The translations under genes were made by a program, and so were the position numbers. Shown piece after piece: positions 1 through 37,196 of a DNA stretch of 64,000 bases. The DNA is from Macrostomum lignano (Eukaryota). How positions within the stretch are numbered: position 1 is the first letter of the stretch; every line of letters starts with the position of its first letter. Below the pieces are notes generated by a model. It had not been told where the DNA came from. It did no database searches and was given only the letters and a program-made list of their open reading frames with translations. The DNA is taken from positions 1 to 64,000 of the forward strand of contig NIVC01000192.1 in the NCBI GenBank assembly GCA_002269645.1, read 5' to 3'.

Positions 1-2160
1 AATAGGCCTGGCTGCAATGTCCCAAATAAATGCCCAACAATTATAGCCTGACTAGGCTGGCTGTGTTTACTATTCAGCGTTTGTACTGTGTCCCAACAAT
101 GCACTGAGATTGTTATTGCTTTTGAATTGTGCTCTACCAATAAACAAGTACTCTGGTGTACAATACTTCTACAGCAGATAATACTCACCCAAAACAGATC
201 GTCTCTTTCTCTTTAATCCTGTGCCGGACGGGTTTTCTTCAGATCCACCAGAAAATTCACAAATAGAGACTGACTGCCTGCACGGATAGCGGCTGCTGCT
301 GCTGCGGCTTGTGAGCAGCAAGTGAACCAAATGACGGATGCAGCGGCGAGATCAGAATGCTCGCTGCTGATCGTTAAAGCGCATTCTTGTCTCTTAGGCA
401 TGTCGCTGGCGTGCTGACTTCAGAATCTGCGAGGAAAAGAAATCAATTAAGATAGGCTTGCTTTAGTAATCATTAATAGGCTATAAAGGAACCCTTTAAT
501 AGAACGTGTTCAACTAATGCTGGGTCTGTTTTGAAAAGTCAGAACTCAGAAGTAGTCGCGATTAGAATCAGTATTGTCCAATAAGTGCGACCCAACAAAT
601 GCTGTTCAAAAAATAGCCTGGCTGCAATGTCCCAATAAATGCCCAACAAATTACTAGCCTTGAGCTAGGCTGGGCTGTGTTTACTATTCAATGCGTTTGT
701 AGCTTGTGTCCCAACAATGCCACTGAGATTGTTGCATTGCTTTTGAATTGTGCTCTACCAAGTAACACAAGTACTCTGGTGTACAATACTTCTACAGCAG
801 ATAATACTCACCCAAAACAGATCGTCTCTTTCTCTTTAATCCTGTGCCGGACGGGTTTTCTTCAGATCCACCAGAAAATTCACAAAGAGACTGACTGCCT
901 GCACGGATAGCGGCTGCTGCTGCTGCGGCTTGTGAGCAGCAAGTGAACCAAATGACGGATGCAGCGGCGAGATCAGAATGCTCGCTGCTGATCGTTAAAG
1001 CGCATTCTTGTCTCTTAGGCATGTCGCTGGCGTGGCTGACTTCAGAATCTGCGAGGAAAAGAAATCAATTAAGATAGGCTTGCCTTTAGTAATCATTAAT
1101 AGGCTATAAAGGAACCCTTTAATAGAACGTGTTCAACTAATGCTGGGTCTGTTTTGAAAAGTCAGAACTCAGAAGTAGTCGCGATTAGAATCAGTATTGT
1201 CCCAATAAGTGCGACCCAACAAATGCTGTTCAAAAAATAGGCCTGGCTGCAATGTCCCAATAAATGCCCAACAAATTACTAGCCTTGAGCTAGGCTGGGC
1301 TGTGTTTACTATTCATGCGTTTGTAGCTTGTGTCCCAACAATGCCACTGAGATTGTTGCATTGCTTTTGAATTGTGCTCTACCAAGTAACACAAGTACTC
1401 TGGTGTACAATACTTCTACAGCAGATAATACTCACCCAAAACAGATCGTCTCTTTCTCTTTAATCCTGTGCCGGACGGGTTTTCTTCAGATCCACCAGAA
1501 AATTCACAAATAGACTGACTGCCTGCACGGATAGCGGCTGCTGCTGCTGCGGCTTGTGAGCAGCAAGTGAACCAAATGACGGATGCAGCGGCGAGATCAG
1601 AATGCTCGCTGCTGATCGTTAAAGCGCATTCTTGTCTCTTAGGCATGTCGCTGGCGTGGCTGACTTCAGAATCTGCGAGGAAAAGAAATCAATTAAGATA
1701 GGCTTGCCTTTAGTAATCATTAATAGGCTATAAAGGAACCCTTTAATAGAACGTGTTCAACTAATGCTGGGTCTGTTTTGAAAAGTCAGAACTCAGAAGT
1801 AGTCGCGATTAGAATCAGTATTGTCCCAATAAGTGCGACCCAACAAATGCTGTTCAAAAAATAGGCCTGGCTGCAATGTCCCAATAAATGCCCAACAAAT
1901 TACTAGCCTTGAGCTAGGCTGGGCTGTGTTTACTATTCAATGCGTTTGTAGCTTGTGTCCCAACAATGCCACTGAGATTGTTGCATTGCTTTTGAATTGT
2001 GCTCTACCAAGTAACACAAGTACTCTGGTGTACAATACTTCTACAGCAGATAATACTCACCCAAAACAGATCGTCTCTTTCTCTTTAATCCTGTGCCGGA
2101 CGGGTTTTCTTCAGATCCACCAGAAAATTCACAAATAGACTGACTGCCTGCACGGATAGC

Positions 2161-2196
<36 letters not shown>

Positions 2197-5100
2197 GCTT
2201 GTGAGCAGCAAGTGAACCAAATGACGGATGCAGCGGCGAGATCAGAATGCTCGCTGCTGATCGTTAAAGCGCATTCTTGTCTCTTAGGCATGTCGCTGGC
2301 GTGGCTGACTTCAGAATCTGCGAGGAAAAGAAATCAATTAAGATAGGCTTGCCTTTAGTAATCATTAATAGGCTATAAAGGAACCCTTTAATAGAACGTG
2401 TTCAACTAATGCTGGGTCTGTTTTGAAAAGTCAGAACTCAGAAGTAGTCGCGATTAGAATCAGTATTGTCCCAATAAGTGCGACCCAACAAATGCTGTTC
2501 AAAAAATAGGCCTGGCTGCAATGTCCCAATAAATGCCCAACAAATTACTAGCCTTGAGCTAGGCTGGGCTGTGTTTACTATTCAATGCGTTTGTAGCTTG
2601 TGTCCCAACAATGCCACTGAGATTGTTGCATTGCTTTTGAATTGTGCTCTACCAAGTAACACAAGTACTCTGGTGTACAATACTTCTACAGCAGATAATA
2701 CTCACCCAAAACAGATCGTCTCTTTCTCTTTAATCCTGTGCCGGACGGGTTTTCTTCAGATCCACCAGAAAATTCACAAATAGACTGACTGCCTGCACGG
2801 ATAGCGGCTGCTGCTGCTGCGGCTTGTGAGCAGCAAGTGAACCAAATGACGGATGCAGCGGCGAGATCAGAATGCTCGCTGCTGATCGTTAAAGCGCATT
2901 CTTGTCTCTTAGGCATGTCGCTGGCGTGGCTGACTTCAGAATCTGCGAGGAAAAGAAATCAATTAAGATAGGCTTGCTTTAGTAATCATTAATAGGCTAT
3001 AAAGGAACCCTTTAATAGAACGTGTTCAACTAATGCTGGGTCTGTTTTGAAAAGTCAGAACTCAGAAGTAGTCGCGATTAGAATCAGTATTGTCCCAATA
3101 AGTGCGACCCAACAAATGCTGTTCAAAAAATAGGCCTGGCTGCAATGTCCCAATAAATGCCCAACAAATTACTAGCCTTGAGCTAGGCTGGGCTGTGTTT
3201 ACTATTCAATGCGTTTGTAGCTTGTGTCCCAACAATGCCACTGAGATTGTTGCATTGCTTTTGAATTGTGCTCTACCAAGTAACACAAGTACTCTGGTGT
3301 ACAATACTTCTACAGCAGATAATACTCACCCAAAACAGATCGTCTCTTTCTCTTTAATCCTGTGCCGGACGGGTTTTCTTCAGATCCACCAGAAAATTCA
3401 CAAATAGACTGACTGCCTGCACGGATAGCGGCTGCTGCTGCTGCGGCTTGTGAGCAGCAAGTGAACCAAATGACGGATGCAGCGGCGAGATCAGAATGCT
3501 CGCTGCTGATCGTTAAAGCGCATTCTTGTCTCTTAGGCATGTCGCTGGCGTGGCTGACTTCAGAATCTGCGAGGAAAAGAAATCAATTAAGATAGGCTTG
3601 CCTTTAGTAATCATTAATAGGCTATAAAGGAACCCTTTAATAGAACGTGTTCAACTAATGCTGGGTCTGTTTTGAAAAGTCAGAACTCAGAAGTAGTCGC
3701 GATTAGAATCAGTATTGTCCCAATAAGTGCGACCCAACAAATGCTGTTCAAAAAATAGGCCTGGCTGCAATGTCCCAATAAATGCCCAACAAATTACTAG
3801 CCTTGAGCTAGGCTGGGCTGTGTTTACTATTCAATGCGTTTGTAGCTTGTGTCCCAACAATGCCACTGAGATTGTTGCATTGCTTTTGAATTGTGCTCTA
3901 CCAAGTAACACAAGTACTCTGGTGTACAATACTTCTACAGCAGATAATACTCACCCAAAACAGATCGTCTCTTTCTCTTTAATCCTGTGCCGGACGGGTT
4001 TTCTTCAGATCCACCAGAAAATTCACAAATAGACTGACTGCCTGCACGGATAGCGGCTGCTGCTGCTGCGGCTTGTGAGCAGCAAGTGAACCAAATGACG
4101 GATGCAGCGGCGAGATCAGAATGCTCGCTGCTGATCGTTAAAGCGCATTCTTGTCTCTTAGGCATGTCGCTGGCGTGGCTGACTTCAGAATCTGCGAGGA
4201 AAAGAAATCAATTAAGATAGGCTTGCCTTTAGTAATCATTAATAGGCTATAAAGGAACCCTTTAATAGAACGTGTTCAACTAATGCTGGGTCTGTTTTGA
4301 AAAGTCAGAACTCAGAAGTAGTCGCGATTAGAATCAGTATTGTCCCAATAAGTGCGACCCAACAAATGCTGTTCAAAAAATAGGCCTGGCTGCAATGTCC
4401 CAATAAATGCCCAACAAATTACTAGCCTTGAGCTAGGCTGGGCTGTGTTTACTATTCAATGCGTTTGTAGCTTGTGTCCCAACAATGCCACTGAGATTGT
4501 TGCATTGCTTTTGAATTGTGCTCTACCAAGTAACACAAGTACTCTGGTGTACAATACTTCTACAGCAGATAATACTCACCCAAAACAGATCGTCTCTTTC
4601 TCTTTAATCCTGTGCCGGACGGGTTTTCTTCAGATCCACCAGAAAATTCACAAATAGACTGACTGCCTGCACGGATAGCGGCTGCTGCTGCTGCGGCTTG
4701 TGAGCAGCAAGTGAACCAAATGACGGATGCAGCGGCGAGATCAGAATGCTCGCTGCTGATCGTTAAAGCGCATTCTTGTCTCTTAGGCATGTCGCTGGCG
4801 TGGCTGACTTCAGAATCTGCGAGGAAAAGAAATCAATTAAGATAGGCTTGCCTTTAGTAATCATTAATAGGCTATAAAGGAACCCTTTAATAGAACGTGT
4901 TCAACTAATGCTGGGTCTGTTTTGAAAAGTCAGAACTCAGAAGTAGTCGCGATTAGAATCAGTATTGTCCCAATAAGTGCGACCCAACAAATGCTGTTCA
5001 AAAAATAGGCCTGGCTGCAATGTCCCAATAAATGCCCAACAAATTACTAGCCTTGAGCTAGGCTGGGCTGTGTTTACTATTCAATGCGTTTGTAGCTTGT

Positions 5101-5358
5101 GTCCCAACAATGCCACTGAGATTGTTGCATTGCTTTTGAATTGTGCTCTACCAAGTAACACAAGTACTCTGGTGTACAATACTTCTACAGCAGATAATAC
5201 TCACCCAAAACAGATCGTCTCTTTCTCTTTAATCCTGTGCCGGACGGGTTTTCTTCAGATCCACCAGAAAATTCACAAATAGACTGACTGCCTGCACGGA
5301 TAGCGGCTGCTGCTGCTGCGGCTTGTGAGCAGCAAGTGAACCAAATGACGGATGCAGC
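1..5358. repeat. Tandem array of ~625-bp units (about 8.5 copies, open at the window edge), each containing a (CTG)n tract
   Basis: Identical landmarks recur at 2478/3102/3727/4352/4977 (period 624-625). Copies 1-4 carry scattered 1-bp indels. The array ends at ~5358 within a unit. Confidence 0.97.
812..4816 (-). other. Putative tandemly repeated symmetric exon (237 nt, phase 1-1), one per 625-bp unit
   Basis: Minus strand: acceptor TTAATTGATTTCTTTTCCTCGCAG|ATTCTG and donor TTTTGG|GTGAGT. Intact copies at 812-1048, 1436-1672, 2706-2942, 3330-3566, 3955-4191, 4580-4816. One frame is open across the exon (SEVSHASDMPKRQ...GLKRKRRSVL); the other two have stops. Confidence 0.5.
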
Positions 5359-7147
5359 GTTGTAAATGCAGGATGCAGGATGATTGGCTGTTGTAAATTA
5401 ATTGATAAATAAGGTGATCGTGCCGCCTCTTTTATATTTCACTGAGCTCAGAGTATTACTAGGCTGCTTATTATTTTTTTCAACGTACAAAAAATACGAC
5501 ATATACGAGTACGAGACAAGACTTACTTGACAATGAAGGCAAATCTGTTTGTTATAGAAGAAAACGGTAGCTTATCGATATCAACGTATCTGGAATTTTA
5601 GAAAAGTACATATGTAAATTCCAGTTAAGTTTTTATTTAATCATAAAATTTTAAAAAGAATTTTAAATTCTACTTACATATGTGTAATGGTTCCTAGCCA
5701 AGTCTTTTCATGCCAGGTCATGCATGGAAACTCTTGTGACGTGGCACATTTTGTCTGTGTAGTGCAGGTCTCGTAAATGAATTATATTCGCTTGAACATA
5801 TGCAGTACCGCCAGTACGCCGTTTGTCAAAGGGAACTTCTACATGTACCTTTCCGTTAGAATTGGCTCTTCCTCTTGTAGGCCTCAACTTCAGTGTAAAC
5901 TTTATCCCGACTCCCTTGCGCCCGCCTCTCCTCCCCGCTTCCCCCCGCCGCGATAGGAATGTACGCGTGGCCTGGGTAAGGGATTGCCTGGGTCTTGTAC
6001 ACGCTTGTCCTAACACTTCTGCACTGTACGTGGGTTTATCTTTACGATCCAAGATAAGCAGAATTGTTTTCCAGGAAGGCCTAGTAGTTAGTTTTGGGCC
6101 AAACTAGTCATCGATTTCGACTTTACAGTGACAGTGACACGCAAACATGTGCTAGCAGTCCATGCAGTCATCTTAAGTTTCTTGGTATCTCAGTACATTT
6201 CAGTATACCAGACGATAATTATCATAATTCTAGGAAAAATTTTTCTACATAGTATAGCTGCCCAAACCCAGGCCAATAAGGAAGTCATTTAAAGCCTTAG
6301 AGATTAAACGTTTCCCTCTAATACTCGTCCTCGGTTTTCTCGGGAAATGCAAAGTTTTTCTTTGCCCTTTATTTCTTTGCTCTAAAAGCGCTTCATAAGA
6401 CTGTGAGAATTTCCACCGGAAAACTACCTCACTCAAAGTGTCACTTTACGTTAATGGCCTCCAGTCACTAACTTGAGTCAGTTAATACCCATTCACATAT
6501 GACAAATAGATTAATGCAGCTGACTGAAAACGAGAATTTCAGTTAAAATGGCCGAGGGCACAGGCGGATGTAACCTTAATTTGCCATGTTTCGTGTATAA
6601 GTGAAATTGGAAGCTAATGAATTTAGATGCTAGCTGTTTCTATGCAAAAATCTAAATATACTAAATCTATAAGGTTTGTATGCTTGATTGTAATATTCTA
6701 AATCTTTATTAAATTATTTCATATTTTATAGTAAACACGATGCCAAATGTCAGGATCCTTTCAAGTGTCGATTGGCAGCCCTGTGGAGAACCTCTATCTG
6801 TTACTTGTAGTAGACTTTCTTGATATTGTAAGAAATATTGTAATAAAACGAGAATTCCGATTTGAGACCCAATTGTTCTGTTGGATCAGACCATCAGTTC
6901 GCATAATTTTTTAAACTTCTTAGGACACTGCAAATCATTAGATTCCCCGTGTTTGATTAAAAATATGAAAAAATGACATTGATTTTTGAAAGGAGAATCG
7001 AAAGACGGTTCCAATGAATATTTTTTCATTTCAATAGAATTCATTTTTGGAAGTGTCGGGACGCACTTATTGGGCCTGGCCCAACACATTTTTGGTCCTA
7101 ATAGCACGGGTCAGTTTATACACGCTTGTCCCAAGAAATGCCTAATG

Positions 7148-7149
7148 CA

Positions 7150-7196
<47 letters not shown>

Positions 7197-7200
7197 ACAC
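7148..7200. repeat. (CA)n microsatellite
   Basis: About 26 CA units seen directly. Confidence 0.95.
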
Positions 7201-8637
7201 AGATATTCTGTTGGATTGCCCACTATTACCCCCTATAAACCAAACTTCAAAGTTTTGACTTTTGAACTTCATTATGTTTTCTAGTGATATCCTTGCAGTT
7301 TTAACCATAGGCCTAGACAATAGCTAAAAGACAGTTGTTGCTTCACTTTCTTATATATTTTGGTGCTATTTTAATTTCATGCTTTTCTAAAGGCTACAAA
7401 GGTTTCTACAACATACTATTATTGTTTTTTTTTGCTTCAAGTTTTTACTATTCCCTATTTTACTCAAACAAAAAATTAATTTAATGAATGAAAGAGGAAA
7501 ATAAAACTGCCAGATGAGATATCCTGATATACAATAGACCTAAGGTATTCATTATTTTTTAGTATTACATTAGTTTATATCCTGGTGAATAGGCTCTATA
7601 ACACAGTGGCACAAAAACCTAGTATAGTATATTATATAAACAAGGTCTCATACTTTTTATAGGCCTAGTATAAAACCTAGTGTATACCAATATATGATCC
7701 ATTATATGCACGGCCGCTGTGCACGCAAGCTCTTTGAACAAAAAATGCTAATAAAAGAAATTACATGGTATTTTTTTCTGCAAAAATATTGTCTCACTGA
7801 AAGTTTTTGTTTTGCAACAAATTGTGCATTTTTTATGTCTTGCACTTGCACCATATTATTGTGTTGAGTGTTTGATTTTTTTCCTTTGCCTACTGTTGCG
7901 CCAGAATGCGCCAGTGTAGCGAATTCATGTTAACTCCCATTTGCACCACAATTTTCTGTGAAATTGGCATCTTCCTGACTATGGTGACATGTCACACTGA
8001 CTACATAGGCCTATGACATGACAGACATATCTGAATCTGTGACCTTATAGAAGATAGAAAAGAAAGATCTGAAGATTCTAAACATAGGCCCTAAGCAAAA
8101 TATCAAACAATTTGCGTACAACTACAACACAAATAACATTGGAGAGCTAGGCCCTTCTTGAATTTCTTGCTTTAGCCTTAACTATAAGCCAAGTCAGATA
8201 GTGAGTTACAGAAAAATAGTTGGGGTTGGGTGATATTCTTATCGAGAGTTACGTAGGTGGTTTTTCCAAGTGGGGTTCCAAGTGTACGAAATACGAGGAA
8301 TGCCTTTAGTAAAACAAAATCTAGATTATTTCTTAAAAACAACTGAAAGAATTTATGCGTTTAGACAAATAATTATATATATTTAGAGTCCAAACATTTA
8401 GACTCTAAACATTTAGAGTCCAAAACTCTAACATGCAACCAGTGCGAGGTGCCTTTTACACAGGGTCTGTTAAAGGTTTCAAATTCATTCATCCTCATTC
8501 AATACTCTTTTTTTAATTCCTTACTTATTAATTCTTGCTTCGTTTTTCGTTAAAGCTCGTTAGAAGTTTCGTAGAAAAACTGAGGCGCTCTTTCAAATAC
8601 TATATTATTGCAAAACTGCACATAGTCAGAACAGTTT

Positions 8638-9861: not shown

Positions 9862-10885
9862 CATATATGCTTAACACCTATCTGAACTGGACAGGTAAAA
9901 TGGCCGCCGGCCAAGGTAAGTTGCAAAATCAAAAGTGGGAAAACAAAAAAATTAAGGGAAGAAAAAAAGGAGAGGAAGAGAAAAGGAAAAGAAAGGAGGA
10001 AGAAAATAGAGTAGAAAGAGGAGAGAGAAGGATAAAGAGAAGAAAATAGAACAGAAAAACTAAGTTGCAATCAGGAGGAACTAAGTTGCATTCGGGAGGA
10101 ACTAAGTCACAATTAGGAGGAACTAAGTTGCAATCAGGAGGAACTAAGTCGTATTCGAGAGGAACTAAGTCACAATTAGGAAGAACTAAGTTGCAATCAG
10201 GAGGAACTAAGTCACAATTGAGAGGAACTAAGTCGCAACCAAGAGGAACTAAGTCCAGTGGTGTGATTCAGGCGCAAATTCTGGGGGTCTGGCGCAAAAT
10301 TTTGTGGAACCATGGGCGCAAAAATTGCATTCTTATTTTCTGCTTTTTACACTTATTCTCTTGTCAGACAGTATGAAATACAAGAATGTCATAGCTTAGG
10401 AGATTAATCTAACAAACTGAGTTCAATCTTTATCATTTTACTTCATGTCTTAGTCAATGTCGTCAATCACCAACACAAGCAGTCGTCTGCCTGCAGACAT
10501 CGCCAACAAGAAATTCAGGCGGGACACGGCTAGGACTTGAGAGACATGCTAATTGGTAGCCAGACGCATAATCAAAAGTGTCATCAATTGACTTTTTTGG
10601 CTGTCAGTAGAATATTATTGGCATGGCACTAAAATTTTTAGTCCGTGTGAAATTTGGCAAACTCCAATCACACCACTGACTAAGTCCCAATTGGGAGGAA
10701 CTAAGTCGCAATTAGGAGAAACTAAGTTGCAATTAAGAGGAACTAAGTCACAATTAGGAGGAACTAAGTTGCAATCAAGAGGAACTAAGTCAATCGGGAG
10801 GAACTAAGTTGCAATCAGGAGGAACTAAGTCCCAATTAGGCAGAACTAAGTTGCAATCAAGAGAAACTAAGTCGCAATCAGGAGA
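9862..10885 (+). mobile_element. Truncated hAT-like MITE (same family as 24626-24948) with purine-rich tract and 21-bp AGGAACTAAG minisatellite
   Basis: 5' end CATATATGCTTAACACC...GAACTGGACAGGTAAAATGGCCGCCGGCCAAGGTAAGTTGCAAAATCAAAA matches the reverse complement of 24870-24948. 21-bp repeats at 10065-10255 and 10679-10885. No right TIR found. Confidence 0.7.
10256..10678. mobile_element. hAT-like MITE nested in the 21-bp minisatellite of another MITE
   Basis: Perfect 13-bp TIR CAGTGGTGTGATT / AATCACACCACTG. 8-bp TSD ACTAAGTC at 10248-10255 and 10679-10686. Confidence 0.9.
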
Positions 10886-12510: not shown

Positions 12511-13695
12511 GGACATATACTAATATAAATTGGCTCAACTGATTTTCTTTAAACTTGTACCATTCAATCAGAAATTTTCCTGGGATAGTACATGTATTGT
12601 GGCTAAGAAATTGCTCAATGTTAAAGGGATTAAATATTCGAAAAACATGCTTTTTTGCAAAGTTAAAGCAATTTTTTTGACTTAAAATGCAATTGTAAGA
12701 ATTTTAGAGAAAAATCTAACTGATTGAATTTTAATTCTAATAAAGATAGCATCATAACAAGTTGAAAACAGTGCCAAAGAAATGCACACAAGACTTGATT
12801 TAAATTGCATAACCAATATTGCTAACTTGAATTGAGACTGATACTGGCTGACTAAGAAATTCATTGTGTCATAACTTTTTACTGTAACTGACTTGCTATT
12901 AGAATTGAAGTATAAGGGCAACAGTTCATGTTCTCCAATTGAAAAGAGATAGCCTAGATGCAAACAGACTGGACTGCTAATGTAGCGACCTAGGTTCAAA
13001 TTTTAGTAGTGCAAAATGATTTTTTTATTAAAACACCTTAAAAACACAAAATGCTAAACATAAAAGAAGCACAATATCAAACAGAAAAGTGGCATGATGT
13101 CAAAAGTTATAGAGCTACCATGTTAAACATAAAAGAGCCACTATGTCAAACAAAAAAGAGCCACCATGTCAAACATAAGAGCCTCCATCTCAAATGTAAA
13201 AGAGCCACCATGTCAAACATAAAAGAGCTACTATGTCAAACATAAAAGAGCCACCACTTTAAACTTAAAGAGCCATCTATGAGGGGGTTGCTAGCTATCT
13301 ATAAGGATTCTTTGTATCCAGGGTTGCTTGCTATCTGGGTTATGCTTGCTATCTGGGGTTGCTTGCTATTGGGGGATGCTTGCTATCTGGGAGATGCTTG
13401 CTGTCTATGGGATGTTTGCTATTTAGGGGATGCTTGCTGTTTTGGGGATGTTTTCTATTAAGGGGGAATGTCTGTTATCTTTGTGAAAACTTTATTTTGT
13501 TGTCTTTCTATTAATTTAAAAAAGAGATTCATAGCAAAAATCTTTGTCCATAACAATTTTACTCAAATAAAGTGATTCTTAAAACTGAAACAGGAAATGT
13601 GCTTAAGAAAAAAGGTGCTTTTTTAATTGTTTTTCATAAATAATTTTTGCTCCTTACTTTTTTCATGCCCCAAAGAAAGGCACTAGAATTGCTAG
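12511..13695 (+). mobile_element. Non-autonomous Helitron-like element, copy H1 (degraded)
   Basis: Shared core (GGCTCAACxGATTTTC..AAACTTG..CCATTC), tRNA-like module ~12950-13000, 23-bp repeats 13080-13275, TGCTTGCTAT repeats, degenerate hairpin TGCC..GGCA, terminal CTAG at 13692-13695. Confidence 0.6.
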
Positions 13696-14365: not shown

Positions 14366-16275
14366 TTAGATTACTGCACTCGATAAGCTAAGGATTATTG
14401 CTCTTGGCAAACCAAGGAATACTGCACTCGATAAGCCAAGGATTATTGCTCTTGGCAAACCAAGGATTACTGCACTCGATAAGCCATGGATTATTGCTAT
14501 TAATAAACCAAGGATTACTGCACTCGATAAGCCAAGGATTATTGCTATTAATAAACCATGAATTACTGCACTCGATAAGCCAAGGATTATTGCTATTAAT
14601 AAACCAAGGATTACTGCACTCATAAGCCATGGATTATTGCTATTAATAAACCAAGGGTTACTGCACTCGATAAGCCAAGGATTATTGCTATTAATAAACC
14701 AAGGATTACTGCACTCGATAAACCAAGGATTATTGCTATTAATAAACCAATGATTACTGCACTCGATAAGCCAAGGACTATTGCTATTAATAAACCAAGG
14801 ATTACTGCACTCAATAAACCAAGGACTATTGCTCTTGGCAAACCAAGGATTACTGCACTCGATAAGCCAAGGACTATTGCTCTTGGCAAACCAAGGATTA
14901 CTGCACTCGATAAGCCATGGATTATTGCTATTAATAAACCAAGGATTACTGCACTCGATAAGCCAAGGATTATTGCTATTAATAAACTAAGGATTACTGC
15001 ACTCGATAAACCAAGGATTATTGCTATTAATAAACCAAGGATTATGCACTTGGCAAACCAAGGATTACTGCAATCGATAAGCCAAGGATTATTGCTATTA
15101 ATAAACCAAGCATTACTGCACTCAATAAACCAAGGACTATTGCTATTAATAAACCAAGGATTACTGCACTCAAAAAACCAAGGACTATTGCTCTTGGCAA
15201 ACCAAGGATTACTGCACTCGATAAGCCAAGGATTATTGCTATTAATAAACCAAGGATTACTGCACTCGATAAGCCAAGGATTATTGCTATTAATAAACCA
15301 AGGATTAATGCACTCGATAAACCAAGGATTATTGCTATTAATAAACCAAGGATTACTGCACTCGATAAGCCAAGGATTATTGCTATTAATAAACCAAGGA
15401 TTATGCACTTGGCAAACCAAGGATTACTGCACTCGATAAGCCAAGGATTATTGCTATTAATAAACCAAGGATTACTGCACTCAATAAACCAAGGACTATT
15501 GCTATTAATAAACCAAGGATTACTGCACTCAATAAACCAAGGACTATTGCTCTTGGCAAACCAAGGATTACTGCACTCGATAAGCCAAGGACTATTGCTC
15601 TTGGCAAACCAAGGATTACTGCACTCGATAAGCCATGGATTATTGCTATTAATAAACCAAGGATTACTGCACTCGATAAGCCAAGGATTATTGCTATTAA
15701 TAAACCAAGGATTACTGCACTCGATAAACCAAGGATTATGCACTTGGCAAACCAAGGATTACTGCACTCGATAAGCCAAGGATTATTGCTATTAATAAAC
15801 CAAGGATTACTGCACTCAATAAACCAAGGACTATTGCTATTAATAAACCAAGGATTACTGCACTCAATAAACCAAGGACTATTGCTCTTGGCAAACCAAG
15901 GATTACTGCACTCGATAAGCCAAGGACTATTGCTCTTGGCAAACCAAGGATTACTGCACTCGATAAGCCATGGATTATTGCTATTAATAAACCAAGGATT
16001 ACTGCACTCGATAAGCCAAGGATTATTGCTATTAATAAACCAAGGATTACTGCACTCGATAAGGCATGGATTATTGCTATTAATAAACCAAGGATTACTG
16101 CACTCGATAAGCCAAGGATTATTGCTATTAATAAACCATGAATTACTGCACTCGATAAGCCAAGGATTATTGCTATTAATAAACCAAGGATTACTGCACT
16201 CGATAAGCCATGGATTATTGCTATTAATAAACCAAGGATTACTGCACTCGATAGCCAAGGATTACTGCGCTTGAT
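14366..16275. repeat. 24-bp minisatellite with 48-bp higher-order alternation (CCAAGGATTACTGCACTCGATAAG / CCAAGGATTATTGCTATTAATAAA)
   Basis: About 80 monomers seen directly; explains the 8-aa periodic ORFs. Confidence 0.95.
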
Positions 16276-16669
16276 AAGCTTGGCTACATGTATAGGATTA
16301 TTTCTATCCAGGGATGCTTGCTATTTAGGGATTCTTGCTATGTGCAGGATGCTTGCTATCTGGAAGGATGCTTCTACATTATTTGGGGTATGCTTGCTAT
16401 CTGCAAGATGCTTGCTATCTGCAAGATGCTTGCTATCTGCAGATGCTTGCTATCTGGGTGGATGCTTGCTAGGAGTATTAGGGGATGCTTGCTACTGGGG
16501 GATGCTTGCTGTCTTGGGAATATTTTCTATTTAGGGGTAATGACTAAAATTCATGAGAGCTAGCCTAGAGGTAAACAGACTAAACTGCTAAATGCAGGGA
16601 CGATGGTTCGAATTTTTAGAGAGTAGAGTTTTTTTAATTAAAGCCTTTTAACGCCAAGACAAAAAAAAT

Positions 16670-18538: not shown

Positions 18539-18572
18539 TTAGGGTTAGGGTTAGGGTTAGGGTTAGGGTTAG
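18539..18572 (+). repeat. Short interstitial telomeric tract (TTAGGG)5
   Basis: Five perfect TTAGGG units plus TTAG. Confidence 0.9.
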
Positions 18573-19156: not shown

Positions 19157-22100
19157 TCCATATACTAAAAATGGTCTGTCGGTATGTGTGTGTGTGTATG
19201 TGTGTGTGTGTGATCGATTTTAGCAAAAACGGCTCAACCGATTTTCTTCGAACTTGCACTGTTCGATCAGAAATTTTCCCGTGACAGTACATGCATCGTG
19301 GCTAAGAAATTGCTTGATGCTAAAGGGATTAAATATTCGAAAAACATGCTTTTTTGCAAAGGTCAAGCAGCTCTTTCGACTTGAAATGCATCGTAAGAAT
19401 GCTAGCAGAAAAACTGACTGGTTGAATTCTGATTCTGAAATAGATTGCATCACAATACACTTTATTTATCGTCTGTGTACTGGCTGAATTTGACACTCAA
19501 TTGAATTGCGTCACAGCTTTGAGTGTGAAAGCATAGCGCAGTACTGAATTTATATTACGTAACCATATTGTAAACTTTCATAGACACTGGTACTGACTTG
19601 CCTAAGAAATTGATTATGTCATAACTGCTTCGTGAGACTTTTTACTCTACCTGACTTGGTGTGAGTGTTGAATTATATAAGTGGTACAACATCACTGATA
19701 ACTTCGATGAGAGCTAGCCTAGAGCTGAACAGACCAGACTGCTAATGCAGCGACCTAGGTTCGAATCTAAGTAGTTTAAAAGTAGTAGTGTAAATTTTTT
19801 TATTAAAAGGTTTTATTAAAGGACTAAATAAAAACACTTAGATTACTGCACTCGATAAGCCAAGGATTATTGCTATTAATAAACCAAGGACTACTGCACT
19901 CGATAAACCAAGGACTATTGCTCTTGGCAAACCAAGGATTACTGCACTCAAGAAGCCAAGGATTATTGCTATTAATAAACCAAGGATTACTGCACTTGGA
20001 AAACCAAGGATTACTGCACTCGATAAACCAAGGACTATTGCTCTTGGCAAACCAAGGATTACTGCACTCAAGAAGCCAAGGATTATTGCACTTGGAAAAC
20101 CAAGGATTACTGCACTCGATAAACCAAGGACTATTGCTCTTGGCAAACCAAGGATTACTGCACTCAAGAAGCCAAGGATTATTGCTATTAATAAACCAAG
20201 GATTACTGCACTTGGAAAACCAAGGATTACTGCACTCGATAAACCAAGGACTATTGCTCTTGGCAAACCAAGGATTACTGCACTCAAGAAGCCAAGGATT
20301 ATTGCACTTGGAAAACCAAGGATTACTGCACTCGATAAACCAAGGACTATTGCACTTGATAAACCAAGGAATATTGCACTTGATAGGCCAAGGATTACTG
20401 CACTTGATAAACCAAGGATTATTGCACTTGATAGGCCAAAGATTACTGCGCTTGATAAACCAAGGATTATTGCACTTGATAAACCAAGGATTATTGCACT
20501 TGATAAGCCAAGGATTACTGCGCTTGATAAACCAAGGATTATTGCACTTGATAAACAAAGGATTATTGCACTTGATAAACAAAGGATTATTGCACTTGAT
20601 AAACAAAGGATTATTGCACTTGATAAACCAAGGATTATTGCACTTGATAAGCCAAGGATTATTGCACTTGATAAGCCATGGATTATTGCACTTGATAGTA
20701 AAGAATGTTGCACTTGATAAGCCAAGGATTAATGCACTGGATTATTCAAGGATTATTGATATTAATAAACCAAGGACTACTCCACTCGATAAACCAAGGA
20801 TTATTGCTCTTAATAAACCAAGGATTACTGCACTTGGAAAACTAAGGATTACTGCACTCGATAAACCAAAGACTATTGCACTTGATAAACCAAGGATTAT
20901 TGCACTTGATAGGCCAAGGATTACTGCACTTGATAAACCAAGGATTATTGCACTTGATAGGCCAAAAATTACTGCGCTTGATAAACCAAGGATTATTGCA
21001 CTTGATAAACCAAGGATTATTGCACTTGATAAGCCAAGGATTATTGCACTTGATAAACAAATGATTATTGCAGTTGATAAGCCAAGGATTATTGCATCTG
21101 ATAAACCAAAGATTATTGCACTTGATAAACCAAGGATTATTGCACTTGATAAACAAAGGATTATTGCACTTGATAGGCCAAAGATTACTGCGCTTGATAA
21201 ACCAAGGATTATTGCACTTGATAAACCAAGGATTATTGCACTTGATAAGCCAAGGATTATTGCACTTGATAAACCAAGGATTATTGCAGTTGATAAGCCA
21301 AGGATTATTGCATCTGATAAACCAAGGATTATTGCACTTGATAAACCAAGGATTATTGCACTTGATAAACCAAGGATTATTGCACTTGATAAACCAAGGA
21401 TTATTGCTCTTGGCAAACCAAGGATTACTGCACTCGATAAGCCAAGGATTATTGCTCTTAATAAACCAAGGATTACTGCACTTGGAAAACTAAGGATTAC
21501 TGCACTCGATAAACTAAGGATTATTGCTCTTGGCAAACCAAGGATTATTGCACTTGATAGGCCAAGGATTACTGCACTTGATAAACCAAGGATTATTGCA
21601 CTTGATAAACCAAGGATTATTGCACTTGATAAGCCAAGGATTATTGCACTTGATAGGCCAAGGATTACTGCGCTTGATAAACCAAGGATTATTGCACTTG
21701 ATAAACCAAGGATTATTGCAGTTGATAAGCCAAGGATTATTGCACTTGATAAACCAAGGATTATTACACTTGATAAACCAAGGATTATTGCACTTGATAA
21801 ACCAAGGATTATTGCACTTGATAGGCCAAGGATTACTGCACTTGATAAACCAAGGATTATTGCACTTGATAGGCCAAAGATTACTGCGCTTGATAAACCA
21901 AGGATTATTGCAGTTGATAAGCCAAGGATTATTGCACTTGATAAACCAAGGATTATTTCACTTGATAAACCAAGGATTATTGCACTTGATAAACAAATAT
22001 TGCACTTGATAAACCAAGGATTATTGCACCTGATAAGCCAAGGATTACTGCGCTAGATAAACCAAGGATTATTGCACTTAATAAACCAAGGATTATTGCA

Positions 22101-23095
22101 CTTAATAAACCAAGGATTATTGCACTTGATAAACCAAGGATTATTGCACTTGATAAACAAAGGATTATTGCACTTGATAAACCAAGGATTATTGCACTTT
22201 ATAAGCCAAAGATTACTGCACTTGATAAACCAAGGATTATTGCACTTGATAAACCAAGGATTATTGCACTTGATTAATCAAGGATTATTGCTATTAATAA
22301 ACAAGGATTATTGCACTAGCTGAGAAGCTGATTACTGCGCTGTCTAAAAAAGAGATTATTGCGCTCGCTGAGACGTGGATTGTTGCACAACCTGAGAAAG
22401 CGATTATTGCATTAGCGGAAGTAACATTTGCACTAGCTACTTGCTGTCTCGTGGATGCTTGCTCTCGAGGGGGGATACTTGCTATTTGGGAGAGGGGGTA
22501 CTGGCTACATGCATGGGATTCTTTCTATCCAGGGATGCTTGCTATTCAGGGATTCTTGCTATCTGCAGGATGCTTGCTATTTAGGGATTCTTGCTATCTG
22601 CAGGATGCTTGCTATCTGGGTGGATGCTTCTATAATATCTGGGGGGTGCTTGCTATCTGCAGGATGCTTCTATAATATCTGGGGGTGCTTGCTATCTGCA
22701 GAATGCTTGCTATCTGGGTGGATGCTTCTATAATATCTGGGGGGTGCTTGCTAATCTGCAGATGCTTGCTATCTGTGGTGATTCTTGCTATGAGCATTAG
22801 AGGATGCTTGCTATCTGCGATTGTTCACTTTTGGAGGGGGTTGCTTGCTGTCTTGGGAATATTTTCTATTTAGGGAAACGATATTTTGTTGACTGTTTGT
22901 TAATTTTAGAGAAAAAGTGATTTTTTAATTTTGCAAACATCTTAGTCCGTGACAATTTTACACGAATAAGGTGATTTTTAAAATGTGAAGAAGGAATTAG
23001 TGTTTAAGAAAATGTGTTTTTTTATTGTTTTCCATGAACTATTTTTGCTCCTTTCTTATTGGGCGCCCCGAAGGGGGGCCGCACTAGATTGCTAG
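19157..23095 (+). mobile_element. Non-autonomous Helitron-like element, copy H3
   Basis: Starts TCCATATACTAAAAATGGTCTGTC followed by (GT)n. Core is near-identical to H2. Ends GCCCC-GAA-GGGG hairpin (23065-23077) and CTAG (23092-23095). Another 5' end with (TCTG)n begins at 23110. Confidence 0.75.
19836..22330. repeat. 24-bp minisatellite (CCAAGGATTATTGCACTTGATAAA), same family as 14366-16275
   Basis: About 100 monomers; source of the spurious 728-aa ORF. Confidence 0.95.
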
Positions 23096-24625
23096 TCAAG
23101 TGCTAAAAGTCCAAATATACTAAATGTCTAAGATCTGTCTGTCTGTCTGTCTGTCCATCTGTAACACTAGAGATTGCAATTCTAGACCAATTTCGATCAC
23201 ATTTTCACCAAATCAAGTGCTAAATGTACTGCTATTTTACTTTGAACAAGATTTCCAATGTATGCAAAAGTAACTATTTAACTATCAGTAATATGTTCAA
23301 AAAATAAAAGTAAAATTATAGCAAATTTGCTCTTTTGTCTGTCTATTTTTTCATTTTGTTTAGTAGGCCTATACTATTTTAGGTCTAGGACAAAAAAGAT
23401 AAGTATAAATTACTAGTCAAATTAAATAGCATTTATTAAATAATTAATGTTCCAAAATTTAATATTAGAATTGGGCCTTGAAAATTTCAGTTTTGATTTC
23501 AAATCTTTATGGCATCTATATTTTCCTTAAATGGAAATATAGATGCCATATAAGAAGCTGAAGGATTAAGATAATTTGAGATACAATCTACATATAAAAT
23601 AGAAAAGAGATTAGAGATAAAAGAACAAAAAGTAGAAAAAAAGGCTAAGGAGAGAGTGAGACAATAAAGGAAATAAGAAGAGTAGCAAATCCTCAGACTT
23701 AAGAAACACAAAGAACCAAAATGTTAAATCAATATGCAGGGATAACTATAGATTGACTAATATTCTTTATGAATTAAATTCTTTTTTTCTTGTTTGTAAG
23801 GTTTTTTTACAATGTGCCATTTAGATTTATGATTCCTTTAGACTAAACAATGTGTTTTGCATATTACCATGCAATAATTCCTTTGGGTTTCCAGTTCCCA
23901 CCTGTTTCTTTATTAGGCCTAGTCTTAGTCTACATATGCATCCGAGGTATACACATCCCATTTCTATTATCTTGATCTAGAATCCTATTAGTTGAGACTT
24001 TGTATCTCACCCACTGTCTAAAAAGCTACAATTTTAACAAATCTTAGATTTTAAAACCTTTAACCTATAGATTTAGTATATACACATATTGAGATTTACT
24101 AAACTGGATATTAGTACATATTTAAAAATTCAGTATATAGCAATGTTAAAGCAATCTAGTGCAGCCCCCCTTCAGGGTGCCCAATAAGCAAGGACGCCCA
24201 ATAAGCTTTTTTGTCTCTGCTTCTTATCTTTTGATTGCATTGTTACCATTAGAAATATATTTAAAAAATTGACTTAAATTTTAATGTCAACTTACAAATC
24301 AGTTTGATCTATCTTTTGTATTAAATTAAAAAATGTTATTTAAATTTATATTTTATTTGCATTTTGATTACTTAAAGAATTACTCATACTTTTCTAGAAT
24401 TTGTTAAAGTAAAAAATGAACCTTGAGCATGAGACTCCTACTTTTTAAACCTATTTAGGAACTCAAAATCTTCTAGAAATGGCTCTATGAATGATAGGTG
24501 CTTCAAGTTAAATGCCACAAAGACTGAAGCAAACACCATTTTGCACTCAAGGACTGAAGAGCTGCTTGAATTGCAATGTTGGACTCAGAAGCAACATGAA
24601 TGGTCATATTCATCAGATTAATAAA

Positions 24626-24948
24626 CATACATGCCCAAACTCAAAATTTTACCTGTCCAGTGAAACTTAGTTCCTCCCAATTGCAACTTAGTTCCTCTTG
24701 ATTGCGACTTAGTTCCCCTGATTGCGACTTAATCTTCACTTTGTATATGACTTTTCTTGCCTTTTTCTCTTTTCTTCTCTTTCTCTCTCCTCTTTCCCCT
24801 CTCTCTTCTCCCTCCTTTCTTTTCCCTTTCCTCTCCTTTCTTTCCCCAATTTTTCCTTTTTTGTGTTTTTGATTTTGCAACTTACCTTGGCCGGCAGCCA
24901 TTTCACCTGTCCAGTTCGGACTTGTCGGACAGGTGTTGGGCATGTATG
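24626..24948. mobile_element. hAT-like MITE (323 bp)
   Basis: Perfect 13-bp TIR CATACATGCCCAA / TTGGGCATGTATG. 8-bp TSD TTAATAAA at 24618-24625 and 24949-24956. Confidence 0.9.
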
Positions 24949-33185: not shown

Positions 33186-34045
33186 CCTTAGGAACAAAAA
33201 TTATATTTCCCACCGCCTTTATTCATTTCAAAGATAACAATAGATTTATGTAGATTATGTACATTTTTATGTACGTTTAATAGGCCTGCTATTCACTTTT
33301 TTGTTGTTTTCTTTATAGTCCCCACAATAGCAAGGGTTTAGTCTGCTGTAGGATTTCATCTTTTCATCAAGGTAGACATTTTGGTCTACCTCATGGCTCT
33401 GCGTGTGGAAGATCCGAAGAAGATCCGAAAGACCAAGTACACCCAGCAATATGTTAAAGTCACCGGAGCCGTCACAATTTGAACAAGTTGCTGAGTTCAC
33501 ATATGCATGCAATATTTACTCAGCAAAATAGTCACCCGCAGTTGATCCAGGATCCCCTTTTCTTCAACTCATCTTCGTTGGTGAACTTTTTCTTGGCCAA
33601 AAAGTAGGGTTAGGGATAACAAATAAAAGTCAATCTCAAGAGGAGAAATGTTTGGGCTGCAAGCTCGATGCGAGAACAGCTCCCAGCCCCAGCTGTAGAA
33701 GCTACAGAACTTACACAGAATGCTCAATCAGTCTACATCAGGGCTCGGCAAACTTTTTTACGTCAAGTGTCAGATAGGGAACCTGTACATGTACCTGTAC
33801 CTGTACATGTACGTGAATTCGGGTCAGAGGACAGAGAAAAGAGAAGAGTGATGGGAGAAAGGAGAAGCGAGGGAATAAAAGGGAAGAGAGGAGAGAGAAG
33901 AAAGAAGATATTTTTAGTTAGTACTAGATAGTATTTTTCTAGCTCCATAAGTGTATAGCAATCAGTACTATTTTGCCTAAATTCGCAATGACTGCTTATT
34001 TGAAAGACGAATTTCATGCATGCCCAGACCGGCTTACCTGGCAAC

Positions 34046-36677: not shown

Positions 36678-36792
36678 TTATACTACTGCTGCTGCTACTA
36701 CTACTACAACTACTAATACAACAACAACTATTACTACTACTAATACTACTACTAATAATACTAATACAACAACAAAAACAACAACAACAACA

Positions 36793-36826
<34 letters not shown>

Positions 36827-36965
36827 ATACTAATACAACAACAAAAACAACAACTACTACTACTACTACTAATACTAATACAACAACAAAAACAACAACT
36901 ACTACTACTACTACTACTACTGCTACTGCTACTACTACAACTACTAATACAACAACAACAACAAC

Positions 36966-37015
<50 letters not shown>

Positions 37016-37134: not shown

Positions 37135-37169
<35 letters not shown>

Positions 37170-37196
37170 AACTACTAATACAAAAACAACAACAAC

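What the first reader, a model, noticed from the sequence alone, without database searches (positions are those of the whole stretch)
1..5358. The 625-bp 'satellite' is built like a tandem array of one in-frame, symmetric exon ending in a furin-like site
Seen: each unit has, on the - strand, a polypyrimidine/CAG acceptor and a GTGAGT donor exactly 237 nt apart (79 codons). The only open frame enters and leaves in phase 1, so exons would splice to each other indefinitely without a frameshift (G+AT = Asp at each junction). Six copies are intact. The encoded unit contains a poly-Ala run and ends in KRKRR|SV. Knowledge: RxKR/RxRR is the proprotein-convertase consensus and KRKR is also an NLS; symmetric exons are the substrate for exon amplification. 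Inference: this could be an exon-amplified repetitive polyprotein cut into ~79-aa peptides, a cassette for variable-length isoforms or circRNAs, or an amplified dead gene fragment.
Basis: partly seen in the sequence, partly recalled or inferred. Interest (0 to 1): 0.72.

Follow-up and report, generated by a model that had tools for sequence, protein, structure and literature searches.

The report
Spliced exon array inside a flatworm transposon
The 625-bp "satellite" is a real, spliced array of one in-frame exon, but it sits inside a crippled copy of a mobile element of the flatworm Macrostomum lignano, so KRKRR is more likely a nuclear-import signal than a secretory cleavage site.

Summary
Window 1-5383 holds about 8.6 tandem units of 624-625 bp. 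On the minus strand each unit has a 237-nt phase-1/phase-1 exon between ttttcctcgcag| and |gtgagt. Six exons are intact, and only one of six frames is open.

The organism is Macrostomum lignano. Public transcript-based gene models splice these exons to each other, removing 385-387-nt introns.

The array is not a free satellite. In ten other loci it is bounded (5-19 units). It lies in a dispersed element with identical ends, (TG)n on both sides and unrelated flanks.

Related 13.6-14.9-kb elements share those ends. One intact copy runs from an ATG through four exons, nine 240-nt phase-1 exons (each with KRKRR) and a 2.6-kb exon, giving 1,741 aa. Its C-terminal region carries tyrosine-recombinase-like motifs, but no profile or fold search confirms this.

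The window copy is a non-autonomous derivative. Its start exon has no ATG and an in-frame stop, about 706 bp are deleted, and loci that keep their 3' end show the catalytic exon is lost in this family. 36 of 114 units are broken.

The furin-polyprotein reading is not supported. Exon amplification, splicing and "amplified dead gene fragment" are.

The parts
7148..7201 (.). (CA)n/(TG)n microsatellite abutting the 5' end of the element
   Evidence: TRF row. In all loci the element is bounded by (TG)n on both sides, and the sequence beyond is unrelated.
7128..7153 (-). 5' terminal sequence of the element, TTTGTGCATTAGGCATTTCTTGGGAC. It includes one TTGGGAC box. An inverted box, CACTTATTGGGCC, lies at 7064-7076 (+).
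   Evidence: Exact match. The same terminus is present in type A loci and in the long type C elements.
5385..7173 (-). Left arm of the non-autonomous element. No long ORF was found in the homologous arm of L001.
   Evidence: 96.4% identical to L001 4420-6192. Homology begins at the same point in L004, L008 and L011. ORF list.
5678..5905 (-). Degenerate homolog of coding exon 1 of the long element. It has no ATG, a frameshift, and an in-frame TGA at 5710-5708.
   Evidence: tblastn with the type C N-terminus: 39% identity over 62 aa, E = 1.7e-7. Translation and coordinates.
5526..5589 (-). Homolog of exon 2 of the long element (ccag|ATACGTTGATATCG...GTCAAG|gtaagt)
   Evidence: Read (compare ATACATTGATGCAGACCCACTACCGTTT in L012). 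Coordinates.
5423..5439 (-). TATA-like box (aaatataaaagaggcgg), with a CCAAT at 5380-5390. Promoter function is inferred only.
   Evidence: Sequence read, coordinates. The box is conserved in L001. No transcription-start data were available.
5359..5385 (-). Junction of a deletion of about 706 bp relative to L001. Most of the exon 3 homolog and the following intron are missing.
   Evidence: Window homology to L001 stops at L001 6192 and resumes in the array. The same junction is translated in UniProt model P0050.
5205..5358 (-). Truncated first repeat exon (unit positions 471-625), ending in the first GTGAGT donor
   Evidence: All other arrays start at unit position 456.
2706..4816 (-). Four consecutive intact 237-nt phase-1 exons (4816-4580, 4191-3955, 3566-3330, 2942-2706), separated by 388-nt introns
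   Evidence: lengths and translations. (99.8-100% identity to the reference unit).
2061..2317 (-). Broken exon, 257 nt. The (GCT)11.7 expansion at 2162-2196 plus a frame loss changes poly-Ala to poly-Gln and leads to a stop.
812..1672 (-). Two further intact 237-nt exons (1672-1436, 1048-812)
189..426 (-). Last complete exon in the window, 238 nt, frame broken. The array runs off the window start.
   Evidence: Unit 1-188 is 92.6% identical to the reference, with indels.
4967..5034 (-). Intronic box cluster: CATTTATTGGGAC (5034-5022), CATTTGTTGGGTC (4993-4981) and CACTTATTGGGAC (4979-4967). It recurs in every unit, for example at 4409-4342, 3784-3717, 3159-3092, 2535-2468, 1890-1823 and 1266-1199.
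   Evidence: TTGGGAC occurs 28 times in the window against 6.8 expected, and 0 of 100 shuffles reach that. These boxes are the longest exact words shared with the diverged type C unit.

Best explanation
Window 1-7173 (minus strand) is the 5' two-thirds of a non-autonomous copy of a dispersed DNA element of Macrostomum lignano. The element is flanked by (TG)n.

Autonomous relatives are 13.6-14.9 kb. They carry one gene with this layout:
- a start exon and three short exons;
- a tandem array of nine or so 240-nt phase-1/phase-1 exons, each followed by an intron of about 415 nt;
- one 2.6-kb exon that begins as a repeat copy and continues into two zinc-finger-like motifs and a C-terminal domain with tyrosine-recombinase-like boxes.

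Because the exon is symmetric, unequal crossing-over changes the number of units without breaking splicing or frame. Each unit adds about 80 residues of low-complexity sequence with one KRKRR motif, most likely a nuclear localisation signal.

The 625-bp family in the window descends from such an array. In this family the start exon is dead, and at loci that keep their 3' end the catalytic part has been deleted. It still has splice sites, and those loci show a short terminal exon with a stop and AATAAA. It is transcribed and spliced, but its ORF is a decaying relic.

Shown: the anatomy, the dispersal, the shared termini, the splicing in public transcript models, and the intact 1,741-aa ORF in L013.

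Inferred: mobility by a tyrosine recombinase acting through (TG)n (Crypton-like); KRKRR as a nuclear localisation signal; the conserved intronic CAYTTATTGGGAC boxes as cis-acting protein-binding sites, which would explain why the array is kept in non-autonomous copies.
For: Organism and family:
- The unit hits only M. lignano proteins.

Splicing:
- GenBank models come from RNA evidence.
- P0007 and P0004 equal the genomic exons joined at the predicted GT/AG sites.
- P0001 differs from its locus only in poly-Ala length, so it comes from a transcript.
- P0046 shows intron retention.

The element:
- All arrays start at unit position 456 and end at about 524-574.
- Homology starts at L001 4420 and ends at 12458 in all loci. 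(TG)n lies at both ends and the flanks are unrelated; one copy is in a myosin intron, one is antisense in a TIR-domain gene, and one is next to a cathepsin gene.
- L001 has a terminal exon with TGA and AATAAA.

Link to a long element:
- P0058 (971 aa, transcript-based) joins type C repeat exons to a long unique ORF.
- L013 has an intact 1,741-aa ORF in which E1-E4 total 424 nt and so deliver phase 1 into the array.
- Three copies are 99.8% identical, lie in unrelated flanks, and have the same termini.
- Type A shares 315 bp of the 5' end (79% identity) and 814 bp of the 3' end (97% identity) with type C.
- Type A keeps a dead exon 1 homolog.

Decay:
- 36 of 114 units are broken. Eleven share the W34 stop and eight share a -1 frameshift.
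- Every array has a broken unit.
- Exons are no less variable than introns.

Boxes:
-.

Recombinase-like boxes:
- They occur in the right order. The composite pattern appeared in 0 of 200,000 shuffles, but the pattern was written after seeing the sequence.
- Crypton features in the literature (no terminal inverted repeats, short direct repeats at both ends, a target-like sequence at the terminus) come from PMC3212892 and PMC9977147.
Against: - No profile or structure search recognises a tyrosine recombinase, or any transposase, in the long ORF. Pfam, NCBIfam, PHROGs, PDB sequences and phage tblastn are all negative. The single-sequence AlphaFold model has pLDDT 38, so its fold matches are meaningless. 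The box reading rests on my memory of the family, and the first His of the tetrad would be an Arg.
- No empty site or excision product was seen. Mobility and (TG)n targeting are inferred from unrelated flanks only.
- 68% of type A exons are still open, and two further diverged repeat types keep the same frame. This leaves room for a protein-level role.
- I saw transcript models, not reads. Strand, promoter use and abundance are unknown.
- The window lacks the 3' end of its own copy.
Confidence: 0.78

Rival explanations
1. This is a host gene for a secreted repetitive polyprotein. Translation starts at MPKRQE. The segment LAAASVIWFTCCSQAAAAAAAIRAG acts as a signal peptide or hydrophobic segment. 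Furin-type convertases cut after KRKRR to release peptides of about 79 aa, or a short SVL[A/D]SEVS[N/H]ASDMP peptide that is bounded by KRKRR and KR and spans the exon junction.
For: - RxKR/KRKRR is present in every unit, and the region around the junction is the best conserved peptide stretch among types A, B and C.
- UniProt names several MPKRQE-starting models 'Secreted protein'.
- Spliced transcripts exist.
Against: - The array is part of a dispersed element with dead upstream exons.
- In full-length relatives the repeats are internal to a 1,741-aa protein with a basic, non-hydrophobic N-terminus.
- The hydrophobic segment, the Met and the cysteines are absent from type C.
- Every array has frame-breaking units.
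- There is no exon-versus-intron constraint.
- There are no homologs outside M. lignano.
Confidence: 0.04
2. The array in the non-autonomous element is kept because its product matters. The product would be a catalytically dead repeat protein rich in nuclear localisation signals, or the RNA itself. It could act, for example, as a regulator or inhibitor of the family's recombinase, as truncated transposase products do in other families.
For: - 77 of 114 exons are open and all splice sites are intact.
- The family is transcribed and spliced.
- Frame and unit length (79-82 aa) are conserved across three diverged repeat types.
Against: - Nonsense and frameshift variants have spread within arrays.
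- Four to five of the nine exon polymorphisms outside the GCA run change the amino acid or introduce a stop, and exons are not less variable than introns.
- The start exon is dead, and a splice-created upstream ATG opens a different frame in L001 (my reading).
- The open frames may simply reflect young age.
Confidence: 0.12
3. It is an ordinary non-coding satellite or minisatellite whose open frame and splice-like signals are accidents.
For: - Shuffled 237-mers are open in at least one of three frames 6.8% of the time.
- Within this window exon and intron are equally homogenised.
- The window is full of other tandem repeats.
Against: - Transcript-based models use exactly these splice sites.
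- Arrays are short and bounded, and have a terminal exon with a stop and AATAAA.
- A homologous array is in frame with flanking coding exons of a 1,741-aa ORF.
Confidence: 0.03

Closest known systems
Crypton DNA transposons (tyrosine-recombinase elements; Goodwin et al. 2003; Kojima and Jurka 2011, PMC3212892; active CryptonF-1_cRei, PMC9977147)
   Same: - A single long intron-containing gene.
- No terminal inverted or long terminal repeats.
- The same short sequence at both junctions, here (TG)n, as expected from recombination between a terminal donor sequence and a like target.
- Multiple near-identical copies in unrelated flanks.
- No reverse transcriptase.
- C-terminal boxes resembling R...K...[H/R]xxR...H...Y.
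   Different: - No profile (Pfam Phage_integrase or DUF3504) detects the domain.
- The junction repeat is a microsatellite of variable length rather than 4-6 bp.
- The gene contains a tandem array of amplified exon-intron modules. I have not seen this described for any Crypton.
In-frame tandem exon amplification in host genes (for example the LPA kringle IV-2 copy-number repeat, NBPF Olduvai exon doublets); from my own knowledge
   Same: - A unit made of whole exon(s) plus intron.
- Symmetric phase, so copy number can change without a frameshift.
- Copy number differs between loci or alleles.
- All copies are spliced into one mRNA.
   Different: - Here the gene is carried by a mobile element.
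- The repeat encodes low-complexity sequence with a basic motif rather than a folded domain.
- Many units are broken.
Transposons with internal tandem-repeat arrays (for example DINE-1/Helentron-derived elements and bivalve elements with central repeats); from my own knowledge
   Same: Dispersed elements with conserved left and right arms, a central tandem array of variable copy number, and microsatellite-associated ends. Such arrays can be mistaken for satellites.
   Different: In those elements the arrays are non-coding. Here each unit is a spliced, in-frame exon plus an intron that carries conserved boxes. No Helitron hallmarks were tested or seen.
Convertase-processed repetitive polyproteins (nematode polyprotein allergens, Drosophila Baramicin A, yeast alpha-factor); from my own knowledge
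   Same: Tandem units of similar size, each ending in an RxK/RR-type basic motif.
   Different: - No signal peptide in the full-length relatives.
- No conserved mature peptide or cysteine pattern.
- The repeats are internal to a large putative recombinase.
- Arrays are interrupted by stops.

Membership tests
In-frame tandem exon amplification | The repeat unit contains a complete exon with acceptor and donor, plus an intron. | tested here: met
   Donors GTGAGTAT 114/114 and AG acceptors 113/113 across 10 loci.
In-frame tandem exon amplification | Exon length is a multiple of 3, with the same entry and exit phase. | tested here: met
   237 nt, phase 1/1. The type C exon is 240 nt, and phase 1 is delivered by E1-E4, which total 424 nt.
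In-frame tandem exon amplification | Exons are spliced to each other in RNA. | tested here: met
   Transcript-derived GenBank CDSs P0007 and P0004 are reproduced by joining the exons. The annotation method is described. Reads themselves were not seen.
In-frame tandem exon amplification | Copy number varies between copies. | tested here: met
   5-19 units per locus. Type C has 8-9 complete repeat exons.
Convertase-processed secreted polyprotein | An N-terminal signal peptide directs the precursor into the secretory pathway. | tested here: not met
   The full-length relative starts MRQKAAKKLKAQRKVRKRPLEV..., with no hydrophobic core. The type A start exon is dead. No signal-peptide predictor was available, so the internal MPKRQE... 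start remains untested.
Convertase-processed secreted polyprotein | A basic cleavage motif lies between units. | tested here: met
   KRKRR is present in every intact unit and in types B and C. The sequence alone cannot separate a cleavage site from a nuclear localisation signal or a purine-rich splicing enhancer.
Convertase-processed secreted polyprotein | An uninterrupted ORF through the array and a conserved mature peptide. | tested here: not met
   Every array has at least one broken unit. The cysteines and the hydrophobic segment are not conserved among types.
Crypton (tyrosine-recombinase DNA transposon) | Encodes a tyrosine recombinase with the catalytic R-H-R-Y residues. | tested here: inconclusive
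   Boxes RRRSSEIS, GKRGRSVP, FLRKHCAT and LGHDITVHRQFY occur in order. Pfam, NCBIfam, PHROGs, PDB sequences and phage tblastn are negative. The AlphaFold model is unusable.
Crypton (tyrosine-recombinase DNA transposon) | No terminal inverted repeats and no long terminal direct repeats. | tested here: met
   Termini read. The repeat search of the arms found none.
Crypton (tyrosine-recombinase DNA transposon) | A short direct repeat at both termini that matches the target. | tested here: inconclusive
   (TG)n lies on both sides in all copies. No empty site was available to show that (TG)n is the target.
Crypton (tyrosine-recombinase DNA transposon) | Multiple copies in unrelated genomic contexts. 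| tested here: met
   At least 6 different 5' flanks and 5 different 3' flanks for type A. Three unrelated flank pairs for type C.
Non-autonomous derivative of an autonomous element | Shares termini with the autonomous element but lacks its coding capacity. | tested here: met
   315 bp of the 5' end (79% identity) and 814 bp of the 3' end (97% identity) are shared. The long exon is absent: the type A terminal exon stops after about 20 unique codons. The exon 1 homolog is dead.
Classical satellite DNA | Long homogeneous non-coding arrays that are not embedded in a larger repeated unit. | tested here: not met
   Arrays of 2-12 kb with fixed start and end points inside a dispersed element.
Known structured RNA gene arrays (spliced-leader RNA, snRNA, 5S, hammerhead-bearing repeats) | A match to a curated RNA family. 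| tested here: not met
   Rfam, E-value up to 1, window 1-8000: no match.

The most novel reading that the evidence does not exclude
A recently active, Crypton-like tyrosine-recombinase transposon of a transgenesis-ready flatworm integrates into (TG)n microsatellites. Its recombinase gene has amplified a module consisting of one symmetric exon plus one intron. The exon adds units bearing nuclear localisation signals to the protein. The intron adds copies of the same CAYTTATTGGGAC boxes that sit at both termini. Protein length and the number of cis-acting binding sites would therefore expand and contract together. This would also explain why non-autonomous copies keep the array after losing the enzyme.
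Probability: 0.3. Interest if true: 0.75.

Novelty: new variant of a known kind. Interest (0 to 1): 0.58.

Why it matters
- It turns an apparent coding satellite into a concrete, testable mobile-element family in a model flatworm whose genome is rich in tandem repeats. Simple and tandem repeats are put at 15% of the assembly in PMC5730564.
- It explains dozens of odd UniProt and GenBank "proteins" made only of this repeat. Some carry misleading names such as Dymeclin or UCH domain.
- If the long ORF is a tyrosine recombinase, near-identical 14-kb copies with an intact 1,741-aa ORF would be a rare candidate for an active animal Crypton with a microsatellite target.
- The co-amplified exon-intron module would be an unusual way for a transposon gene to vary its own length and its cis sites.
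- For annotation, such arrays should be masked as TE-derived and not called secreted proteins.

Tried and rejected
- RNA families: an Rfam scan of window 1-8000 at E up to 1 found nothing. I dropped the spliced-leader, snRNA and hammerhead-repeat ideas.
- Pfam on the repeat proteins gave only sub-threshold, summed low-complexity hits such as Bd3614_N. I rejected them.
- AlphaFold on a three-unit protein gave pLDDT 42, which is uninformative.
- Paralog comparison of arrays for coding constraint found too little divergence. What there is shows no exon-versus-intron difference.
- DNA for the diverged type B repeat (P0045/P0028) could not be obtained. It has no GenBank model and is absent from the loci held.
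- Expression look-ups for Mlig029855, Mlig026960, Mlig003618 and Mlig020682 in the full text and in the supplements of three papers found nothing.
- Recombinase identification by Pfam, NCBIfam, PHROGs, PDB sequence search, phage tblastn and AlphaFold plus Foldseek was negative or unusable throughout.
- The UniProt names (Dymeclin, UCH, BAF250_C, Rho-GAP, DRIM, SANT, Kazal-like) cannot be traced in the sequences fetched: those contain nothing but the repeat, and P0053/P0056/P0057 carry added sequence in which I saw no such domain.
- The conserved-cysteine and disulfide-rich peptide idea was rejected because the cysteines are not conserved in types B and C.
- A literature search for Macrostomum satellites or Cryptons found no description of this element.

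Full report
**1. The observation**

Direct-repeat search finds nine register-matched copies over window 1-5383, with spacings of 621-625 bp and one of 645 bp. TRF did not report the repeat because its longest period is 500.

On the minus strand every unit reads ttttcctcgcag|ATTCTGAAG...TCTGTTTTGG|gtgagta.
- Six exons are exactly 237 nt: 4816-4580, 4191-3955, 3566-3330, 2942-2706, 1672-1436 and 1048-812. In phase 1 they give a 79-aa unit ending KRKRRSVL.
- One exon (2317-2061) is 257 nt. A (GCT)n expansion at 2162-2196 has cost it the frame.
- One exon (426-189) is 238 nt.
- The uppermost copy is truncated in mid-exon at about 5358.

Only one of the six frames is open. A shuffled 237-mer is open in at least one of three frames 6.8% of the time. 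The ORF by itself therefore proves little.

**2. Organism and transcript evidence**

The two-unit peptide hits 30 proteins, all from Macrostomum lignano and all built from this repeat. An exhaustive search of 1.84 billion representatives found no relative outside that species.

Several hits are GenBank BOX15_Mlig models. According to PMC5730564 that annotation was built from RNA-seq (StringTie/TACO), BLAT-mapped de novo transcripts, and experimental trans-splicing and poly(A) boundaries.
- Joining genomic exons at the predicted GT/AG sites, which removes 385-387-nt introns, reproduces P0007 at L002 and P0004 at L003 exactly.
- P0001 differs from its locus only in poly-Ala length. One 130-aa product is placed on eight contigs with different spans. 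This is what one expects from a short assembled transcript mapped onto arrays.
- P0046 reads into the intron (..RRSVLGEY).

I did not see reads.

**3. The array is bounded and sits in a dispersed element**

In ten further loci the array always begins at unit position 456, with a truncated exon preceded by its own acceptor. It always ends at about 524-574 and has 5-19 units.

L001 shows the 3' end. A last exon is homologous to the repeat for about 170 nt. It then reads ..AIRAGSQLIDEFSGRAGYFLSF, a TGA stop, and AATAAA about 80 nt later.

Homology among loci begins at one point (L001 4420; window 7173) and ends at one point (L001 12458). Beyond these points the sequences are unrelated. One copy lies in a myosin intron, one is antisense in a TIR-domain gene, and one lies beside a cathepsin-like gene. 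Both ends abut (TG)n:
- 5' end: (TG)nTTTGTGCATTAGGCATTTCTTGGGAC...
- 3' end: ...AATAAGTGCCTCGTGCACGTTTG(TG)n

. The left arm has no long ORF. The window copy also lacks about 706 bp present in L001. The same junction is translated in UniProt model P0050.

**4. Diverged repeat types and the long element**

UniProt models reveal two further repeat types with the same unit length and frame.
- Type B: ASKVSNASDMPKRED...GLKRKRRSVL (P0045).
- Type C: ASEVESSADASRIEPN...ANAKRKRRSAQ (P0053, P0056 and P0057).

The conserved peptide features are KRKRRS..ASEV, which spans the exon junction, and an SQ[S/T] motif. The cysteines, the internal Met and the hydrophobic/poly-Ala segment are not conserved.

A transcript-based GenBank model, P0058 (971 aa), joins type C exons to a long unique sequence. 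Its loci (L012-L014) carry nine or ten units of 655 bp (a 240-nt exon plus an intron of about 415 nt), followed by one 2.6-kb exon.

Upstream lie an ATG exon (239 nt) and three short exons (62, 63 and 60 nt). Together these total 424 nt and so end in phase 1. In L013 the frame runs unbroken from the ATG through the nine repeat exons and the long exon, for 1,741 aa. The transcript model then splices on to one more small exon.

The three copies are 13.6-14.9 kb and 99.8% identical. They lie in unrelated flanks and are bounded by (TG)n with the same terminal sequences as type A. Type A shares 315 bp at the 5' end (79% identity) and 814 bp at the 3' end (97% identity) with them. Type A also retains a homolog of their exon 1, at 39-44% amino-acid identity. 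In the window (5905-5678) that homolog has no ATG, a frameshift and an in-frame TGA.

The window's array is therefore the internal module of a non-autonomous, deleted relative.

**5. What the long protein is**

After the repeats come two C2H2-like motifs. These are followed, in order, by RRRSSEIS, GKRGRSVP, FLRKHCAT and LGHDITVHRQFY. From memory these resemble the Arg, beta-hairpin Lys, HxxR and LGH...Y boxes of tyrosine recombinases, with an Arg in place of the first His. A composite pattern written after seeing the sequence occurs in 0 of 200,000 shuffles.

Against this, Pfam, NCBIfam, PHROGs, PDB sequences and phage tblastn give nothing. The single-sequence AlphaFold model has pLDDT 38, which makes the Foldseek output meaningless.

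Several features fit the published description of Cryptons (PMC3212892; PMC9977147):
- no terminal inverted repeats;
- no reverse transcriptase;
- the same short repeat at both junctions;
- a single intron-bearing gene.

Membership is not established. I put it at about 0.55.

**6. Coding constraint in type A**

Among 114 units from ten loci, 77 exons are intact and 36 are broken. Eleven share TGG to TAG at codon 34, and eight share a -1 frameshift. These are inherited changes rather than random assembly errors. Every array has at least one broken unit.

Variable sites number 13 of 237 in the exon and 11 of 388 in the intron. Of the nine exon polymorphisms outside the GCA run, most change the amino acid and one is a stop.

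Between type A and type C, exon and intron are about equally diverged. The longest exact shared words are intronic: GGCATTTATTGGGAC and GCACTTATTGGGACAA. Next come AATGATTAC and the exon start TTCTGAAGTC.

The TTGGGAC core is over-represented: 28 occurrences in the window against 6.8 expected. It also occurs at the 5' terminus, in inverted form near both termini, and in the 38-bp minisatellite of the right arm. This suggests a DNA-level role for the intron boxes. That is inference only.

**7. Verdict**

The polyprotein/furin reading is not supported.
- The repeats are internal to a large, probably nuclear, transposon protein.
- There is no signal peptide at the true N-terminus.
- No mature peptide is conserved.
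- The arrays in this family are decaying.

KRKRR is best read as a nuclear localisation signal. A role of the purine-rich AAGAGAAAGAGACGA as a splicing enhancer cannot be excluded.

The feature is a new variant of a known kind. It is a non-autonomous copy of a probable tyrosine-recombinase element with an unusual amplified exon-intron module.

Noticed in passing
window 10058-10885, 13321-13458, 14369-16268, 16304-16514, 19841-22317, 22515-22818, 24665-24731: The stretch from 10 to 25 kb is a mosaic of related minisatellites. The 21-bp AACTAAGTCGCAATCAGGAGG repeat at about 10.1-10.9 kb reappears as its reverse complement at 24.7 kb. The 18-bp GGGATGCTTGCTATCTGG blocks flank 24/48-bp GATTATTGCACTTGATAAACCAAG arrays. 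This looks like a composite repeat structure, possibly another element with internal arrays.
   Followed up: no
window 19937-23097 and L002 16702-19882: The 24-bp minisatellite block of the window is 95% identical, in inverted orientation, to a block lying about 650 bp downstream of the type A element in L002. It is a second repeat family that tends to sit near these elements, or is simply common.
   Followed up: partly
window 18539-18572: An interstitial TTAGGG run of 5.7 perfect copies.
   Followed up: no
window 36681-37678: A (TAC)n microsatellite of about 1 kb (333 copies, 89% matches).
   Followed up: no
window 29559-30167 (+): The ORF matches the Glu/Leu/Phe/Val dehydrogenase domain (Pfam ELFV_dehydrog, E = 2e-30). 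It is probably an exon of a glutamate dehydrogenase gene.
   Followed up: partly
window 34016-34795, 46495-47229, 52867-53349, 53899-54408 (+): The ORFs have protein-kinase domain matches (E = 5e-12 and 6e-13) and a weak ANF_receptor match (E = 1e-4). They may be exons of one or two receptor-kinase or guanylate-cyclase-like genes, interrupted by GC-rich minisatellites.
   Followed up: partly
L013 15890-16249 (-): Inside the long type C element, an antisense 119-aa ORF (..SKMTVYRWMEQFSEGRIDLADQHWTGRP..) looks to me like the N-terminal helix-turn-helix of a mariner-type transposase. It may be a nested fragment. It was not run against Pfam.
   Followed up: no
L001 6320-6335 and 6890-6900: In type A the splice of ..AAATACTAT|gtgagt to cacag|GTTCATCC.. 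would create an ATG across the junction. It would open a different frame (MFIRIQTRRCIRHLVHLLLTSRSS...RYPCRQSVYL), an upstream short ORF ahead of the KRKRR frame.
   Followed up: no
L012 9796-10034 and L014 9796-10034: Two of the three long copies, at different loci, share the same 239-nt (frameshifted) repeat exon. L013 has the intact 240-nt version. Either a defective copy transposed, or both assemblies carry a shared error.
   Followed up: partly
UniProt models P0012, P0023-P0027, P0029, P0030, P0053, P0056: Repeat-only or repeat-led ab initio proteins carry names such as Dymeclin, UCH domain-containing, BAF250_C, Rho-GAP, DRIM, SANT and Kazal-like. I could not trace any of these in the sequences themselves.
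   Followed up: partly
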